DNA from: Parasitella parasitica NRRL 2501
Taxonomy: Eukaryota; Fungi; Mucoromycota
Direction: 5' to 3'
Length of the DNA stretch: 64,000 nucleotides
NCBI GenBank assembly: GCA_025201805.1
Contig: MU619256.1
Span: 246,333-310,332 of the forward strand
The translations under genes were made by a program, and so were the position numbers. The notes under the pieces were generated by a model that ran no database searches, was not told the DNA's origin, and worked only from the letters and a program-made list of their open reading frames with translations. Every line of letters starts with the position of its first letter. Positions within the stretch are counted from its first letter, which is position 1. Positions 5,553 to 12,274 of this stretch are shown in pieces.

Positions 5553-6701
5553 TTAGATTGATTTAACAGATGGCAAAGCCATGTTTGATTTTTTTGGCGC
5601 TCTTCTATGAAATGTATCTGTTAATGTCATTTGAGAAGCTGAAGCAGTGCGTTTCAACGGAACCTCATTTGTGTTTTCGGTGATTGTGGGTATCTTTTCC
5701 AGTTTCGCATCATGATCTGGTTTCTTGATCTTTTGTTGAATTAGGCGTACCCAATCATCTGTATCCCCCAGTACTTCATAATCAAACACTTTATCCCATT
5801 CTTTTGTAGGGGCAGTGCGATTAATGAATATAACTTTTCCGTTTCTGGTTGAATGATGTATTAATTTTGCTGCCTGCTTAATAAACTTTTTAAGGGCGGG
5901 GATCTTCAGGGAGGTGCCCATAACAATCATCATATCTGGTTTTTTGCGCAAGTCCGTGTCTTGTAACTTTCCTATAGTCTCGCCATCTGGATGGTCTTCG
6001 TTATATAACACAATGTCAGGTCTCAAAGTGCCCATAGCTAATTGTCGTTTGCCTAACCGAGTGCGCTCGTTGTCATACGTCTCGCATTGTGGGCAGATTG
6101 GTGGGTTTCCGTTTCTAAACTGATCTTCATAATCAGATGTGAAATCGTAAGATGCTGTGCACAATGTACATTTAACTCTATCCATGGATCCATGGAGTCT
6201 AACCACTGATAAATCTAGTGGGTCTTCTAAGCAATCTATATTTTGTGTATAACATCGCATTAATTTGCCGCTTTCTTGTAGGTTACGAATAAATGAATGC
6301 GTGGCTGTAGGAATCGCTGTTGATATCACCGATTTTAGTTCAGCCATAAAAGTGTAGAAACATTCAGTTTGTCGTTTGTCTTTGAATAGCATGGCATCAA
6401 ATAGATCTTGCCCCTTCAATATAATATTTGGGTGTTTCTTCTTTACCAGATCATATAGTCCATCTGAAGAACGAAAATCCTATATACGGGATATTTAGTT
6501 TTCTTTTTTTTTTTTTTTTTNNNNNNNNNNTAGCTTAAAAGAGTCATTGCTTCTATATCATACAGGAATACCACCATTACAAGAAATACCGGCACCTGTA
6601 ATCACTAAGACTCTTTTACTATTGTCTATATGAGCAGCAAGTTCGGTAATAAGAGGATCAATAACTTCCGTTGGTTCATCTATAATTATTTTTGTCTTCA
6701 T
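5553..6701 (-). CDS. HST3: NAD-dependent deacetylase, Sir2 family, Hst3/Hst4 class; 2 exons
   Basis: Exon 1 ends VLVITGAGISCNGGIP and exon 2 begins DFRSSDGLY. Contains YTQNID, catalytic LHGS, zinc ligands CxxC...CxxC, RPDIVLY and MGTSLKIP. The intron contains an N gap. Confidence 0.92.
6521..6530. other. Assembly gap (10 N) next to a poly-T run
   Basis: Run of n inside the sirtuin intron. Confidence 1.
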
Positions 6702-8316
6702 GGCTTATTTTGAATAGGTATATTAATGATAATATAAATTTAGGAGAAGAAAAAGAACAAAAGAAACGAAAAAGTCATTCAATCATACTTACTCCCTATA
6801 TCAAAAATGTCTCATAAACAAGCATAAACCAATTACATTTTCTTTCATCCAAGCGAACAGCTTAGGACTGGTATGAGCAAGTTACATAGCATTTCTCAAA
6901 GCTACTTCAAGCTCAGTTACTGAATTCATCTAGGCAATATAGTAGCTGAAGTTAATTATTCTCTCATTGATACCATACACCTTAGTAAAAACTTTTTAAG
7001 GACTTGAGTTGTCCTCGGGAGCGACCAAATATTTGATAGTGGTCTTGTGATTAAACCGTTAGCCTTGATCTAAAAATTGCATTACACAATGTATGAAATA
7101 CTATTACACAACTTTATATTTGATGTTGATTACATAAAAAGTACCTTCAACACCTGCGTATGCTGCTTAAATCACGCATGTTGTTGGATTTAAGACATGC
7201 TTGTTCTGGTGGTCTTGAAAACCGATCTTCATCATTGTATCTAGCTCATTCTATTAAATGTCAGAAAAATTGATAATTTATATGTTTAATTCTACTCTAA
7301 ATGCACTGATATATGTAAGAAACATCTAACCGCATAAAATTCCTGCCTTACGCTAGGTAACGTGCAATTTTGACAGTTGAACCTCACATATTTCCAATGG
7401 CGGCATTCTCTAGCACATTTGATAAACTAATGCTTGAACATTATTTATAAGGTAATTTGATATGAATAACAAAGAAATCTACATTTATCGCTGCCATCCT
7501 TCCTTTTGAAGATTCACATTGTCAACTCTTTAAGGAAATTGATAATTTCTGGATATAGTATTGCATGGGGGATCACGCTTTTATGGTGATGGTGTCAAAT
7601 TAGTGTACAGCATGTATCCAGGAACATGAGATGTGGTTTTAAACATTGATTTACATATGTATAGCTTTTTTAGAACTCTTAGATTGTATATGCCTCAATA
7701 TCATTTGATAAAGCCAAGGATACCTTCATAGAACTATTTGGTGCATCATAATTGCTTACACAAATCGTGGATTGTCAAATGTCAGGTGTTTGACGATAAC
7801 CTTGCAAACTTAGCATGGAGAAAATTAAAATTCAATTACATTTCAGATATCACTACAATCTGCCTTAGGAGAGATAATAAGGAAAAAGAAAGGAGAATTC
7901 GAGGTAGAAGTCTCTTAACGCACCTAGTTTCTCTCATTGTAAAGGAATTTGCACTATTATTTACAAAAATTGCTTGGGTAACACGAAGGATAGTTGAGAG
8001 AAAAAATTTTTCATCTCTTCTCTAAGGGATGACTCCATTGCCATTTACACACCCCCCGCAAAAATAATTATATATTTTCCTCTTTTTTCCTTCTTCCTCA
8101 TTCCTCTTTCCTCTTTTCTCTGTAAACTCTCTCTCTATCTATTTATTTTGAATATAGATCCAAAAAAAGGCATTCAATATTCATCATACAAAGCAAACAT
8201 ATATAATAGATAAAGCATAGAAATTAAACACATTGCTGCTTTTCATCACCTCACAAATTGGAAATTGTTGCATTCAACTTTAAAATACCAGACATAAAAA
8301 TACATTCTGTTTAGAA

Positions 8317-9857
8317 ATGAGAGGCTTTGCTAATCAGTTAAGAACAAAGCAAGGTGCAATTATCGGCGCTGGTGTAGTTATTGTGATTACTGCCATCACT
8401 ATCTGGAGCTGGAAGTCTTCTTCCTCAAGCAAAAAAGACAGTAAGTTATCCCACAATTAAAATAAGGGGTTACTGGGGGAGTCTTCTCCAGAACTATTGT
8501 TGCATCCTAGAAAAAAAAAATAGAAAATAACTTGGCAGTTAAGCTATTCGTAAGCGCGTATACTAATCTGTCTTACTTTTTTTTCGTTGTTTTTTTTTGC
8601 AATCTCATGTAGGTGATTCCCCAGATGAGCGATCTGTCAAAACCAAGAAAGAATCTGTAGCTAAGGATCAAAACGACATGGTTGTCAGGCAGTCACATAT
8701 CAAGAAGGATATTGAGCAAGCATCTTCTGTTATTGTAAAGGAAGAAGGTAAATCACCACATGTCTTGGACTAAAGGAGGCGATATTAATTTTATTGTTTT
8801 GTAGTCAATACTTCAGTCAATAAAGTTGAGGATTTACCTTTGGAAAAGAAAAATGACGGGTCAGAAGAGGAAGTTAAAGTTATTGAGAAAAAGGAGGTTG
8901 TTACAGAGACTGTTGCGGAAGTTGTCGAAGGTCATTATGATGAATCCTCAAGCATAAAAAGCCATACCTTGTCAGCAGCTACTAGCAGCGCTGACGAGAC
9001 TGATATTTGTACTCCTGAACATGAAGCTAATACTGTTGCTGATGTCAAGCATTCCCAATCATCTGCTCAAACCGATACCCAAAATAACAATATTGAAAAG
9101 ATCAAGTTCGATTGGACTGAGGAGTCTGTCAAAGCTGCTTTACCTCCCATCAATCGTGATATTATTACTGTTTCTACTTCTGATGTTGACTCTGCCGAGT
9201 CCATTGCCACTGCCGAGTCCATTACCACTGCCACTGCCACCGTTACCGAATCTCAGCAACAAGAGAGTACTTTTACCGCTACTGTGATCAAATCTCAGCA
9301 ATCGAAGCAGAAAGAACAAGAAGAGTATGTTGTCATTGACTATCCCGCTGAACAAGTATCAATTAAAGAGCAAGTTGTTACTACCCCTGCTACTGTCACT
9401 ATGACCAACACTGAAGAAAAGCCAGTTTTATCCGAGAAGGTCGAAGTTTCCCCAACTCCTCTGTCAAGCTCCTTAACTGCTAGTGCACCCGAATTCGTCC
9501 CGAAATCCTGTCAACAACCCAAGAAACCAGTAAAGAAGTTTTTAACTCGTGATGAATTGATCGAACAACAACGACAACACCATATGCCAAGATCAAAAGC
9601 CAGATGTAGCCACTGGCCGCGTTGCACCAACAATAACTGTAAATTCTTCCACCCTTACAGACCTTGCCGGTAAAATTTGCATATATTTTGTTTCCTTTGA
9701 CTTTGAAAAACTAAATCATAACTGTTATCTTAGGGCTGGAGACGATTGTTCGTTCGGTGATAGATGTATGTTTGTCCACCCTAATGACTGTGCAGTCAAT
9801 GTTCGAGATGGCAACAAAAACACTGCTGCTGATACTACTACATCTATCCCAGCATAG
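8317..9857 (+). CDS. N-terminally membrane-anchored protein with a PAM2 motif and two C-terminal CCCH zinc fingers; 4 exons (8317-8440, 8613-8747, 8805-9669, 9734-9857)
   Basis: MRGFANQLRTKQ-GAIIGAGVVIVITAITIWSW-KSSSSSKK (TM); acidic E/T-rich linker; SSLTASAPEFVP (PAM2); CSHWPRCTNNNCKFFHP and spliced CRAGDDCSFGDRCMFVHP. Confidence 0.8.
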
Positions 9858-12274
9858 ACTTACTGAATACACACTACACACAACAAACAAACACACACAA
9901 AACAATAACATCAAAAAAGGAACCACACATTTTTTTTTCTCTAAAAAATATAATTGTATATCTTTGCTTTTACAGAACTCAACCTTCCCTTGCTATCTTT
10001 TTTTTTTTTGCTCCATCTTGTTTATCTTTTTTCAAACAAATCCCCCAATCAACCCGTATTTTTTTCTTTATTTTTAATTATTGTATATTTCTAAATCATG
10101 TCAAGATCAATAAAAATTCAAGAAAAAAAAAAAAAAGAACCATTTGGTGTGATGGTCAACAGTGCTTCAAATTATTCAGTTCCTACAGTACACTTTATTC
10201 GAAAATTATTGAGTCAAGAAAAAAATGTTAGTTCCTAGTATTTACCGTATGTGAATCCAATCCATATCAAAACCAAACTTCTACGCAGTACTCGCCTACA
10301 TTGCCTCTACTCCTCTGTGCAGTTTCGTGTAAGTGTGATGTTTCCATTCAGAGTAATTAGCAAAAAGCTGTGATTCTGGCTGTATTTAAGCGAATCCAAT
10401 CCATATTGCACCAAACTCCGCTCACAGGGAACAAATTGCGGAATTTTGAAATCGAAATAGCAGCTTTCAAAGTCCGTCAATCCCACTATGCTTTGAAGGT
10501 CGTTGTTTATCACTTTCAGGGTAGTGCTTCCATTAATACAGTGATGTATTTGCAAATAGGTTTCTATGACACAAGTTAGCAAGAAAATTGAAACAATAAA
10601 AGCTCTCCTAATTGCAAGCATGAAAAGAGTTTATTTTCAATTTAATTTGTTCTTCTGGAATACTGCAAAAGATATAGACATGCTTTGATATTGGAGATTG
10701 GAAACTGTAAGTTTTGGTAGGAAATACTAAAATTATTAACAAACGAGAAGAGAGGCTTTTTCTCGAATCAAAATTGTTGCGCAATGCAATATCTATGTCA
10801 AGTATTTTATTGTTAGCCAGTTTCACATGTTGTCAATTTGGAGGTTCATCTGATGATGTTGTCTTGCTAAACAATAGTCAGTAAAAGCTACCATACACTT
10901 GTAAATAGAAGATATAAAAATATTAGCTTAGATTTTTGTCAACTGCCAATCACAGAGTGTTTTTACTTGTATCTATCCATTTTTTGATATCACTTTGGTT
11001 AATCTTTAATAAGGCGCTATACCGTTCTTGATCCATCGTCAGATCAACCACAAGTTCATAAAAAAATCCAATTATATTTAAATCTGCGGAAGATTAAGAT
11101 TCGTACGATGATAAGATTATTCTACTATCCTGATGAATGACCAATGACTAATGACTACTACCTCTGATCAATACAAGTAGTGTGATAGTCTGAACGATCG
11201 ATTAGATTATAAGGTATGGCAAGAAATAACAGTAAGTACAATCAATAGCTAGTAAAACGATAATCAATTAGGATAAATAGAGATGCAAAATAGCAACTTT
11301 TCGTACACTCAAACAATTAAAGATCATAAGCGTATCTCACTTTGCTTTTTTACTGTTTTTTTTTGTACTTCATGGCATAAACGAATAAAAAACTCACATA
11401 TGGATGCTATTACAGCAAAGCACACAAAGAAAGTGTTAAAGATATATCGCAAGTATATACAAATCAATAGGTCAATGAATTTTCAAGATAGGTGATGAAC
11501 GTATTCCATAATGGAAATTATTACCATTGCTGTATTTTGCTAAAAGAGCGGGAGTCTTAACATTGATATTGCATGATGTAGACACATGAATTGAATTCCA
11601 CTGCTAAAGATAACTGTAGTGTGGATTTTATTATTATTCATGTTTATGAAAGGGCCGAACGAACCTAGAAATGCATTGTTTATGAATTGCCACTATAGTT
11701 AATGAATGATAAAAAGAATCAGAAAGTGAACGAGTCTTTGGATAAACCCCAGCTGTAACCTTGACGAAAATTTGAATATTGAATCATGGGATATGAAGCG
11801 GCAAAATTTACGCGTACCATCCAAACAAAATTACTGTGTAAGCCATGCCTAGGTAATTTTCAACATTTGTAAATAAATTACATGACGTTATGATTAGAAA
11901 AAAAAAAATCGCTTCACGCCAATATAGATCATTTAGAGAATTCCCAAAAAAAAAAAATTAATCTAAACATCTATTGTATGTGATAGTTACACTCATGCAT
12001 GTGAGAAACAAGGAAACCGACTAATAAATCAGAAGAATGAAATAGTCTTATCAAATATACGATGATTTCAGGTTTGTAATAAACTACTTCAAGTATGCAC
12101 ACAATCGCTGAACTATTCAGTGGGATTCGCAGGACAAATGAATTATGGTATAATATACAACTGACGGAGTGACAATCAGTTTTTGTTTGCCAAACAAAGA
12201 AACCCTCTCTTTCTTTGTACACACTACTACTCTTCCCTCTACTTGAATTCAACCGTTTCTTTCTTTCAATTTAA

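What the first reader, a model, noticed from the sequence alone, without database searches (positions are those of the whole stretch)
8317..9857. Candidate organelle-surface mRNA tether: TM anchor + PAM2 + tandem CCCH fingers
Seen only after splicing four exons: an N-terminal TM helix flanked by basic residues, a long acidic disordered spacer, a canonical PAM2 (SSLTASAPEFVP), then two CCCH fingers. The first has Nab2-like CX5CX4CX3H spacing and the second is CX5CX5CX3H. Known: PAM2 binds the MLLE domain of poly(A)-binding protein; Nab2/ZC3H14 fingers bind poly(A); N-terminal signal-anchors with basic flanks target the mitochondrial outer membrane (Tom20/Tom70/AKAP1) or the ER. Ustilago Upa1 uses PAM2 motifs to link mRNPs to endosomes, but through a FYVE domain. 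Inference: a single protein that docks PABP-bound mRNA on an organelle for local translation or hitch-hiking transport in coenocytic hyphae. I know of no described fungal protein with this architecture.
Basis: partly seen in the sequence, partly recalled or inferred. Interest (0 to 1): 0.8.

Follow-up and report, generated by a model that had tools for sequence, protein, structure and literature searches.

The report
Membrane-anchored poly(A)/PABP-binding protein family
This is a real, expressed four-exon gene of the fungus Parasitella parasitica. Its protein joins a membrane anchor to a docking motif for poly(A)-binding protein and two poly(A)-type zinc fingers, and it belongs to an unstudied family found across the early-diverging 'zygomycete' fungi that probably holds mRNAs at an organelle surface.

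Summary

The 415-aa product has four parts:
- an N-terminal hydrophobic helix;
- a 277-aa acidic, Ser/Thr-rich spacer;
- a PAM2-like motif;
- two CCCH fingers that pass Pfam's Nab2-type threshold when read spliced (40.3 bits against 25.8).

The deposited model of this gene (P0001) starts inside exon 2 and lacks the anchor.

The architecture is not a one-off. A profile search found it in Mucorales, Bifiguratus, Calcarisporiella, Mortierellales and Kickxellales, and every named entry is 'hypothetical'. Only the anchor, the PAM2 core (L..A..F.P) and the fingers are conserved across these lineages.

In Kickxellales and most Mortierellales members the charge around the anchor puts the C-terminal part in the cytosol.

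I found no paper describing a transmembrane PAM2 protein.

The most likely function is an integral-membrane receptor for poly(A)/PABP mRNPs. The membrane (ER or outer mitochondrial), MLLE binding and RNA binding are all untested. I rate it a new variant of a known kind, with interest about 0.6. The scan had not noted this before.

The parts
8117..10069 (+). Transcribed region as covered by one spliced transcript contig (5' leader 8117-8316 without ATG; 3' UTR 9858-10069)
   Evidence: (contig pieces, 0 other letters)
8317..8440 (+). Exon 1 (coding part): start codon, short basic N-terminus, TM helix, Ser-rich basic flank; ends in phase 1
8353..8412 (+). Hydrophobic transmembrane anchor, residues 13-32 (GAIIGAGVVIVITAITIWSW)
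   Evidence: conserved position in orthologues
8441..8612 (+). Intron 1 (172 nt, GTAAGT..TAG)
8613..8747 (+). Exon 2: start of the acidic/basic disordered spacer. The deposited model P0001 begins at an internal Met in this exon.
8748..8804 (+). Intron 2 (57 nt, GTAAAT..TAG)
8805..9669 (+). Exon 3: rest of the spacer, PAM2, linker helix, finger 1 and the first Cys of finger 2
8972..9025 (+). Acidic island SAATSSADETDICTPEHE inside the spacer. It is conserved within Mucorales only and its function is unknown.
9467..9502 (+). PAM2-like motif SSLTASAPEFVP (L, A, F, P core)
   Evidence: 12.8-14.6 bits, cut-off 20; core invariant in the unselected alignment A1; enrichment test
9539..9583 (+). Conserved linker helix FLTRDELIEQQRQHH between PAM2 and the fingers (Mucorales, including the paralogous subfamily)
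   Evidence: (AF2 helix at residues 32-42 of the module)
9605..9652 (+). CCCH finger 1, CX5CX4CX3H, Nab2 type
9670..9733 (+). Intron 3 (64 nt, GTAAAA..TAG). It splits finger 2 after its first Cys.
9665..9779 (+). CCCH finger 2, CX5CX5CX3H (first Cys 9665-9667, split codon R, rest 9735-9779)
9734..9857 (+). Exon 4: rest of finger 2, short tail, stop codon

Best explanation
The gene encodes a single-pass membrane protein. It is anchored by an N-terminal signal-anchor helix, and all the rest faces the cytosol.

A roughly 280-residue acidic, disordered spacer holds a compact C-terminal module away from the membrane. The module is a PAM2 peptide followed, about 35 residues later, by two Nab2-type CCCH fingers.

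The PAM2 peptide would dock the MLLE domain of cytoplasmic poly(A)-binding protein, and the fingers would contact adenosines of the tail itself. The protein would therefore recognise the poly(A)-PABP end of mRNAs and hold them at the surface of an organelle, either ER or outer mitochondrial membrane, for local translation, storage or co-transport.

Shown here: the transcript and exon structure; the presence and family-wide conservation of the anchor, the PAM2 core and the fingers; the Nab2-type classification of the fingers; and MLLE proteins in the same genome.

Inferred, not shown: membrane insertion and orientation, the identity of the organelle, binding to MLLE, binding to poly(A), and the cellular outcome.
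For: - The transcript joins the TM exon to the PAM2/finger exons.
- Orthologous gene models in Mucor, Choanephora, Blakeslea and others have the same N-terminal helix at residues 10-32 and no other hydrophobic segment.
- A profile of the C-terminal module gives 570 hits at E<=1e-3 and 98 at E<=1e-10. Among the best 150, 65 have an N-terminal hydrophobic segment plus a C-terminal finger pair. Of these, 44 match a PAM2 pattern, against 0.35% of shuffles.
- Named members come from Mucorales, Bifiguratus, Calcarisporiella, Mortierellales and Kickxellales.
- In the unselected alignment A1, the L, A, P, F, P of PAM2 and all eight zinc ligands are invariant while the spacer diverges to about 30% identity.
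- No other motif in the spacer is shared between lineages.
- The PAM2-to-finger distance is 23-42 residues in 45 of the 66 proteins (68%) that have both a PAM2 match and the finger pair.
- The Kickxellales members have no positive charge before the helix and up to +8 after it. Most Mortierellales members have 0 or +1 before it (one has +2) and usually more after it. This is the orientation that leaves the C-terminus in the cytosol.
- The fingers pass Pfam's gathering score for zf-CCCH_2 (40.3 against 25.8 bits). Their closest solved relatives by sequence are Nab2 fingers 5-7, solved free (2lhn, E 7e-5) and on polyadenosine RNA (5l2l, E 6e-5).
- Several positions that contact adenosine in Nab2 (PMC3384006) are kept in 34 of 34 family modules: Asn two residues after the second Cys, and an aromatic two residues after the third Cys in both fingers.
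- The genome encodes at least five MLLE domains, two of them at the C-termini of Pab1-like proteins.
Against: - No experiment of any kind exists for any member.
- The window's PAM2 has T where N or S is usual and scores 12.8-14.6 bits, below Pfam's 20.
- In the window's clade finger 1 has S-H after its first Cys. Nab2 fingers 5 and 7, and about half of the family, have a basic-aromatic pair there, and its mutation lowers Nab2's poly(A) affinity about 40-fold. This protein may therefore bind poly(A) weakly or bind something else.
- Two fingers are fewer than the three that suffice for high-affinity binding in Nab2.
- In the Mucor clade the N-flank carries +2 to +3 and the C-flank 0 to +2, so on its own sequence the orientation is ambiguous.
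- 21 of the 65 anchored relatives lack a recognisable PAM2.
- The structure search gave Nab2 fingers as top rows, but not significantly (E>=0.2).
- The profile used for the family search contained the PAM2 region, which favours PAM2-bearing hits in the ranking.
- Alignments A3 and A4 were chosen with a PAM2 pattern, so their invariance is circular.
Confidence: 0.55

Rival explanations
1. The anatomy is the same, but the protein sits in the nuclear envelope or inner nuclear membrane. There it acts like an anchored Nab2, holding or checking polyadenylated RNA at the nuclear periphery rather than tethering cytoplasmic mRNA to an organelle.
For: The fingers are of the type otherwise known from the nuclear proteins Nab2 and ZC3H14. 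Basic clusters lie next to the fingers: KKPVKK in the window, RKRRP tails in Mortierellales and RRSKRK in Kickxellales. From my own knowledge, a basic cluster combined with a long disordered linker to a TM resembles the inner-nuclear-membrane targeting signal of yeast Heh1/Heh2.
Against: PAM2 partners are chiefly cytoplasmic PABPs. The basic clusters are not positionally conserved between lineages and could simply aid RNA binding. There is no PWI-like Nab2 N-terminal domain.
Confidence: 0.15
2. The PAM2-like peptide binds not Pab1 but another MLLE protein of these fungi (an Rrm4-like transporter). [quoted passage not shown]
For: The genome has at least three further MLLE loci besides the two Pab1-like ones. 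Rrm4 and Upa1 orthologues are reported in Mucoromycota, whereas the multi-PAM2 scaffold Upa2 is confined to Basidiomycota (bioRxiv 10.1101/467787).
Against: The motif fits the classical PAM2 core (L..A..F.P). In U. maydis, Pab1 and Rrm4 MLLE domains distinguish PAM2 from PAM2-like motifs (PMC8490996). Nothing here tests specificity.
Confidence: 0.12
3. The motifs are not used as proposed. The PAM2 match is a conserved peptide with another partner, and the fingers bind protein or a non-poly(A) RNA element. The protein is then a membrane-anchored regulator of unknown kind.
For: The window's PAM2 scores below Pfam's threshold. The window's clade has lost the basic-aromatic pair in finger 1. Some relatives lack PAM2, and a paralogous subfamily replaces it with repeated PFLAxYEATTA units.
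Against: L, A, F and P are kept across three subphyla in an otherwise unalignable region. The family's best Pfam PAM2 hit is E 1.5e-5. Finger residues matching Nab2's adenosine contacts are invariant.
Confidence: 0.13
4. The N-terminal hydrophobic stretch is a cleaved signal peptide or a type II anchor, and the rest of the protein is lumenal or secreted.
For: In the Mucor clade the N-flank is more basic than the C-flank. On the positive-inside rule alone this favours N-terminus-in.
Against: The hydrophobic core is about 20 residues, long for a signal peptide. Kickxellales and most Mortierellales members show the opposite charge bias. Zinc-cysteine fingers and PAM2 have only cytosolic or nuclear partners.
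Confidence: 0.03

Closest known systems
Nab2 / ZC3H14 (nuclear zinc-finger poly(A)-binding proteins)
   Same: The finger type is the same: CX5CX4-6CX3H, Pfam zf-CCCH_2 above the gathering score. The best solved relatives are Nab2 fingers 5-7, solved free and on polyadenosine RNA. Shared features are the T-N after the second Cys, K-[FY] after the third, and a basic residue after the first Cys of finger 2.
   Different: There are two fingers instead of five to seven. There is no PWI-like N-terminal domain and no RGG or QQQP regions. An N-terminal membrane anchor and a PAM2 are present. The window's finger 1 has S-H instead of K/R-F after its first Cys.
Ustilago maydis Upa1 (and Upa2): PAM2-bearing adaptors that link mRNPs to endosomes
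   Same: An organelle-attachment element is combined with a PAM2 for Pab1 in a largely disordered protein of filamentous fungi.
   Different: Upa1 attaches through a lipid-binding FYVE domain and has ankyrin repeats, a RING and PAM2-like motifs for Rrm4. It has no RNA-binding fingers. The present family is an integral membrane protein with its own RNA-binding module. Pfam finds no FYVE, ankyrin or RING domain.
PAN3 (deadenylase subunit) and MKRN1
   Same: One polypeptide places a CCCH finger next to a PAM2, which allows joint recognition of poly(A) and PABP (own knowledge for PAN3; MKRN1 in bioRxiv 10.1101/516005, listed).
   Different: Both are soluble. PAN3 carries a pseudokinase and a PAN2-binding domain, and MKRN1 carries a RING. 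Neither has a membrane anchor, and the order of finger and motif differs in PAN3.
Integral-membrane mRNA or ribosome receptors of animals: SYNJ2BP (outer mitochondrial membrane), p180/RRBP1 (ER), AKAP1/MDI-Larp
   Same: The logic is the same: a transmembrane anchor plus a cytosolic RNA- or RNP-binding part that retains mRNAs at an organelle for local translation (PMC13626737; AKAP1/MDI-Larp from own knowledge).
   Different: There is no sequence relationship. The RNA-binding modules differ (PDZ, KH/Tudor, lysine-rich repeats). None has a PAM2 or Nab2-type fingers. SYNJ2BP is tail-anchored.
Signal-anchored outer-membrane proteins Tom20 / Tom70 / OM45
   Same: There is a very short N-terminal segment, a moderately hydrophobic Gly/Ala/Thr-rich helix and a bulk cytosolic domain (own knowledge; family values).
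   Different: This is only a compositional resemblance. Kickxellales members have more hydrophobic helices followed by runs of Arg, which is more like ER P450-type anchors. Localisation is untested.

Membership tests
PAM2-containing PABP partners (Pfam PF07145) | Match to the PAM2 profile at or above Pfam's gathering score (20 bits) | tested here: not met
   The window protein scores 12.8 bits (exon 3 alone) and 14.6 bits (spliced module). Relatives do better: P0094 scores 18.6 bits, and the family's best E-value is 1.5e-5, with 25 of 34 modules hitting at E<=1.
PAM2-containing PABP partners (Pfam PF07145) | Core residues Leu3, Ala7, Phe10, Pro12 of the 12-residue motif, conserved in orthologues | tested here: met
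   The window reads SSLTASAPEFVP. L, A, P, F and P are invariant in the 12 unselected orthologues of A1. 44 of 65 anchored relatives match the pattern, against 0.35% of shuffles.
PAM2-containing PABP partners (Pfam PF07145) | Physical binding to an MLLE domain | not testable with these tools
   Only the presence of partners is shown: at least five MLLE loci in the same genome.
Nab2 / ZC3H14 family | Nab2-type CCCH fingers (Pfam PF14608 above its cut-off) | tested here: met
   40.3 bits against 25.8, in two stretches, on P0001:241-339. All 8 full-length members tested pass. The PDB profile search puts Nab2 fingers 5-7 first, E 6e-5.
Nab2 / ZC3H14 family | Five to seven tandem fingers and an N-terminal PWI-like domain | tested here: not met
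   Only two fingers are present. Pfam finds no other domain, and the N-terminus is a TM helix.
Nab2 / ZC3H14 family | Basic then aromatic residue after the first Cys of the high-affinity fingers (Nab2 K416-F417, R459-F460) | tested here: not met
   The window's finger 1 has S-H. R/K/H followed by F/Y occurs in Mortierellales, Kickxellales and others (21 of 34). Finger 2 has R-A, like Nab2 finger 6 (R-E).
Upa1-type endosomal mRNP adaptors | FYVE domain, ankyrin repeats, RING, PAM2-like motifs | tested here: not met
   There is no Pfam hit other than zf-CCCH_2 in the window's protein or in 7 relatives.
Single-pass signal-anchored proteins with a cytosolic C-terminus (ER type III or outer mitochondrial membrane) | One N-terminal hydrophobic helix of about 19-20 residues, a very short preceding segment, and no other TM | tested here: met
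   The Kyte-Doolittle mean is 1.5-2.8 at residues 5-32 in 44 members. The next best segment is below 1.3 in the orthologues.
Single-pass signal-anchored proteins with a cytosolic C-terminus (ER type III or outer mitochondrial membrane) | Charge bias with the more positive flank on the C-terminal (cytosolic) side | tested here: inconclusive
   The bias is clear in Kickxellales (N-flank -2 to +1, C-flank +1 to +8). It holds in most Mortierellales (N-flank 0 or +1, once +2; C-flank usually higher, but -1 to +1 in several). It is absent or reversed in the window's Mucor clade (N-flank +2/+3, C-flank 0 to +2).
Single-pass signal-anchored proteins with a cytosolic C-terminus (ER type III or outer mitochondrial membrane) | Experimentally shown membrane integration and organelle | not testable with these tools
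   No localisation data exist for any member.

The most novel reading that the evidence does not exclude
Zygomycete fungi possess an integral-membrane receptor for the poly(A)-PABP end of mRNAs, which would be the first transmembrane PAM2 protein. It would tether polyadenylated mRNAs directly to the outer mitochondrial or ER membrane without a soluble adaptor. This would give coenocytic hyphae a built-in way to localise translation or to move mRNAs with organelles. A paralogous subfamily would carry a different repeated docking motif on the same anchor-plus-finger chassis.
Probability: 0.4. Interest if true: 0.75.

Novelty: new variant of a known kind. Interest (0 to 1): 0.62.

Why it matters
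Organelle-coupled mRNA localisation is an active field: endosomal transport in Ustilago, SYNJ2BP and AKAP1 on mitochondria, p180 on the ER. In every described case the membrane link and the PABP or RNA contacts are made by different domains than here, and often by separate proteins.

A single small protein that unites a transmembrane anchor, a PABP-docking peptide and poly(A)-type fingers would be the simplest tether yet. It is conserved over several hundred million years of fungal evolution in lineages that include the agents of mucormycosis and industrial Mortierella, and that lack the Basidiomycota-specific scaffold Upa2.

It is directly testable in Mucor, which is genetically tractable. 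The work also corrects the deposited gene model, which lacks the anchor.

Tried and rejected
- **Word-indexed homologue search with a diverse full-length alignment, and with a Mortierellales module.** Both returned only close relatives, so they did not extend the taxonomic range. I therefore cannot say whether Dikarya, Glomeromycotina, chytrids or non-fungi have the family. None was seen among about 35 named hits.
- **ESM Atlas look-up.** There was no usable feature hit. The structural neighbours are ZC3H14/Nab2 at TM<0.3. The Atlas model of the orthologue has pLDDT 0.42, consistent with disorder.
- **Foldseek of the AF2 module.** Nab2 fingers rank first but E>=0.2, so I do not use this as evidence.
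- **Search for further shared short motifs in the spacer across lineages.** It found only compositional (acidic) similarity. The LIR-like EEYVVI and the acidic island ATSSADETDICTPEHE are confined to Mucorales and I leave them uninterpreted.
- **Literature searches.** I searched for TM+PAM2, membrane-anchored CCCH proteins, and UniProt or locus identifiers of family members, and found nothing.
- **Cleaved signal peptide or matrix presequence.** I considered and rejected both because Kickxellales N-termini are acidic or neutral.
- **Searching with a typed, joined four-exon protein.** The exons were searched by reference. For the spliced C-terminal part I used the deposited identical model P0001 by reference.
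Full report
**Observation.** The region 8317-9857 (+) reads as a four-exon gene. The exons are 8317-8440, 8613-8747, 8805-9669 and 9734-9857. The introns are 172, 57 and 64 nt, all GT..AG, and the split codons give S, V and R.

The only public run holding this sequence (X1) contains one 1660-nt contig. It matches 8117-10069 without a single difference and skips exactly these three introns. A contig lacking the introns must derive from RNA, so the exon that encodes the hydrophobic helix is joined to the exons that encode PAM2 and the fingers. The 200-nt leader has no ATG, so 8317 is the first AUG.

The product has 415 residues:
- residues 13-32 form the only hydrophobic segment;
- about 277 residues follow with net charge -23 and 25% Ser+Thr;
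- next comes SSLTASAPEFVP, then a short basic stretch and a helix;
- last come CX5CX4CX3H and CX5CX5CX3H, the second split by intron 3.

**Organism and annotation.** The organism is Parasitella parasitica (Mucorales). The deposited protein BD408DRAFT_412679 (P0001, 352 aa) is 100% identical to the window's product but starts at an internal Met in exon 2, so it lacks the anchor. Orthologous models in other species include the anchor. The own genome holds one copy of this gene plus one distant paralogue on another contig.

**Domains.** Scanned exon by exon, both fingers hit Pfam zf-CCCH_2 (Nab2 type) just below threshold. Read spliced, by reference to P0001:241-339, they score 40.3 bits against a cut-off of 25.8.

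PAM2 scores 12.8-14.6 bits against a cut-off of 20, so by Pfam's rule the window's motif is sub-threshold. No other Pfam domain is present in the window's protein or in seven full-length relatives.

A profile of the C-terminal module finds Nab2 fingers 5-7 as the best solved relatives (5l2l, 2lhn, E about 6e-5). An AlphaFold2 model of the module has a mean pLDDT of 66.8, about 80 over the fingers and a helix at residues 32-42. Its Foldseek neighbours are again Nab2 fingers, but not significantly.

**Family.** A first search with exon 3 found full-length orthologues in Mucor, Choanephora, Blakeslea, Gilbertella and the Mucor mucedo group. All have the helix at residues 10-32, a divergent acidic spacer, L..AP.F.P and the two fingers.

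An exhaustive profile search with the C-terminal module gave 570 hits at E<=1e-3 and 98 at E<=1e-10. I sorted the best 150 by simple rules:
- 65 have an N-terminal hydrophobic segment and a C-terminal finger pair;
- 44 of those 65 also match a PAM2 pattern, against 0.35% of shuffled versions of the same proteins;
- 13 have PAM2 and fingers but no helix, and several of these are evidently truncated gene models, as P0001 is;
- the rest are fragments or multi-finger Nab2-like proteins.

Names retrieved for about 35 representatives place the architecture in these groups:
- many families of Mucorales;
- Bifiguratus and Calcarisporiella;
- Mortierellales: Podila, Dissophora, Mortierella, Linnemannia, Gamsiella, Haplosporangium;
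- Kickxellales: Coemansia, Kickxella, Martensiomyces.

Every name is 'hypothetical' or 'C3H1-type domain-containing'. No Dikarya, chytrid or non-fungal member was seen, but most of the 570 hits could not be named, so absence is not shown.

**What is conserved.** In the unselected alignment A1, the PAM2 core and all eight zinc ligands are invariant while the spacer falls to about 30% identity. Alignments A3 and A4 show the same, but I chose their members with a PAM2 pattern, so I do not count that invariance.

An all-against-all comparison of spacers from different lineages found only compositional similarity.

PAM2 ends 23-42 residues before the first Cys in 45 of the 66 proteins that have both a PAM2 match and the finger pair. 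This suggests that the two elements act on one target.

**Fingers compared with Nab2.** Brockmann et al. 2012 (PMC3384006) map the adenosine contacts of Nab2 fingers to four positions:
- the basic residue after the first Cys;
- the aromatic residue next to it (fingers 5 and 7);
- Asn at position 9;
- an aromatic residue at position 14.

In 34 family modules, finger 1 always has T/S-N after the second Cys and K-[FY] after the third. Finger 2 has R after the first Cys in 32 of 34 and an aromatic after the third Cys in all. The pair after the first Cys of finger 1 is R/K/H followed by F/Y in Mortierellales, Kickxellales and others, but S-H in the window's clade. The ancestral module looks like a Nab2 finger 5-6 pair. 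The window's version may have weaker or altered specificity.

**Topology.** Kickxellales members have neutral or acidic N-termini and up to eight net positive charges just after the helix. Most Mortierellales members have 0 or +1 before it (one has +2) and usually a higher charge after it, though several have only -1 to +1 there. Both patterns mostly predict a cytosolic C-terminus.

The Mucor clade, including the window, has +2 to +3 before the helix and 0 to +2 after it, which is ambiguous on its own.

Helix hydrophobicity ranges from moderate in the Mucor mucedo group and the Mortierellales (1.6-2.1) to high in most Kickxellales (2.2-2.7). It therefore does not settle whether the membrane is the outer mitochondrial membrane or the ER.

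The genome has at least five MLLE loci, two at the ends of Pab1-like proteins, so partners for PAM2 exist.

**Interpretation.** The most economical reading is an integral-membrane receptor for the poly(A)-PABP end of mRNAs. The anchor sits in the membrane, a long flexible acidic spacer follows, PAM2 binds the MLLE domain of PABP, and the adjacent fingers bind adenosines.

From my own knowledge, pairing a finger with PAM2 is the logic PAN3 uses. Attaching a PAM2 to an organelle is the logic of Upa1. A transmembrane RNA-binding anchor is the logic of SYNJ2BP and p180.

The combination in one small protein is not described in the literature I could search.

Rival readings are:
- a nuclear-envelope location with a Nab2-like nuclear role;
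- a different MLLE partner, such as an Rrm4-like protein;
- motifs used for other partners;
- a lumenal topology, which is unlikely.

**Limits.** Everything about function is inference. There is a single RNA data set. The family census rests on representatives at 50% identity and on simple pattern rules. The profile contained the PAM2 region, which biases the ranking towards PAM2-bearing hits. The joined four-exon protein was not typed or searched as such. Exons were searched by reference, and the deposited identical model P0001 served for the spliced C-terminal part.

**Verdict.** This is an undescribed family built from known modules, which I rate a new variant of a known kind, with interest about 0.6.

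Noticed in passing
L004 (G000 contig C39:7278-10457, minus strand); relatives P0045, P0048: This is a paralogous subfamily on the same chassis. In Mucor (P0045, 730 aa) an N-terminal TM helix is followed by up to nine roughly 29-residue repeats with the core PFLA[AEKT][YF][ED]ATTA. Three Nab2-type fingers follow, preceded by the same 'ERIERQSQ' helix. The own genome's copy has the repeats and three fingers. The repeat motif matches nothing I know and replaces PAM2.
   Followed up: partly
window 8972-9025: The acidic island SAATSSADETDICTPEHE in the spacer is conserved across Mucorales (Mucor, M. mucedo group, Rhizopus microsporus, Cokeromyces, Pilobolus) but not beyond. It may be a short linear motif or a phosphorylation site of unknown partner. 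An acidic-aromatic EEYVVI (9317-9346) looks like an Atg8-interaction motif but is also clade-restricted.
   Followed up: partly
window 8317-8747 compared with P0001: The deposited gene model of this strain (BD408DRAFT_412679) starts at an internal Met in exon 2 and lacks exon 1. The transcript contig and the orthologues show the longer form with the membrane anchor.
   Followed up: yes
P0094, P0124, P0115, P0104, P0073 (Kickxellales members): These members carry lineage-specific conserved pieces. One is a membrane-proximal QPLL..SAIRTRYV....FARS. The other is a C-terminal basic cluster followed by D-I-[IV]-[KR]-[LF]-N-x-L-E. Mortierellales members end in RKRRPQSSDSSASM. Their functions are unknown.
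   Followed up: no
window 5553-6419 (-): The upstream, divergently oriented neighbour has an ORF with sirtuin-like motifs (GTSLKIP, and Cys pairs of the zinc module). It is unrelated to the finding and was not examined further.
   Followed up: no
L006-L010 (own genome): There are five loci with MLLE domains: two Pab1-like C-termini, one further RRM+MLLE gene and two weaker ones. The weaker ones are candidates for Rrm4-like or other MLLE proteins.
   Followed up: partly
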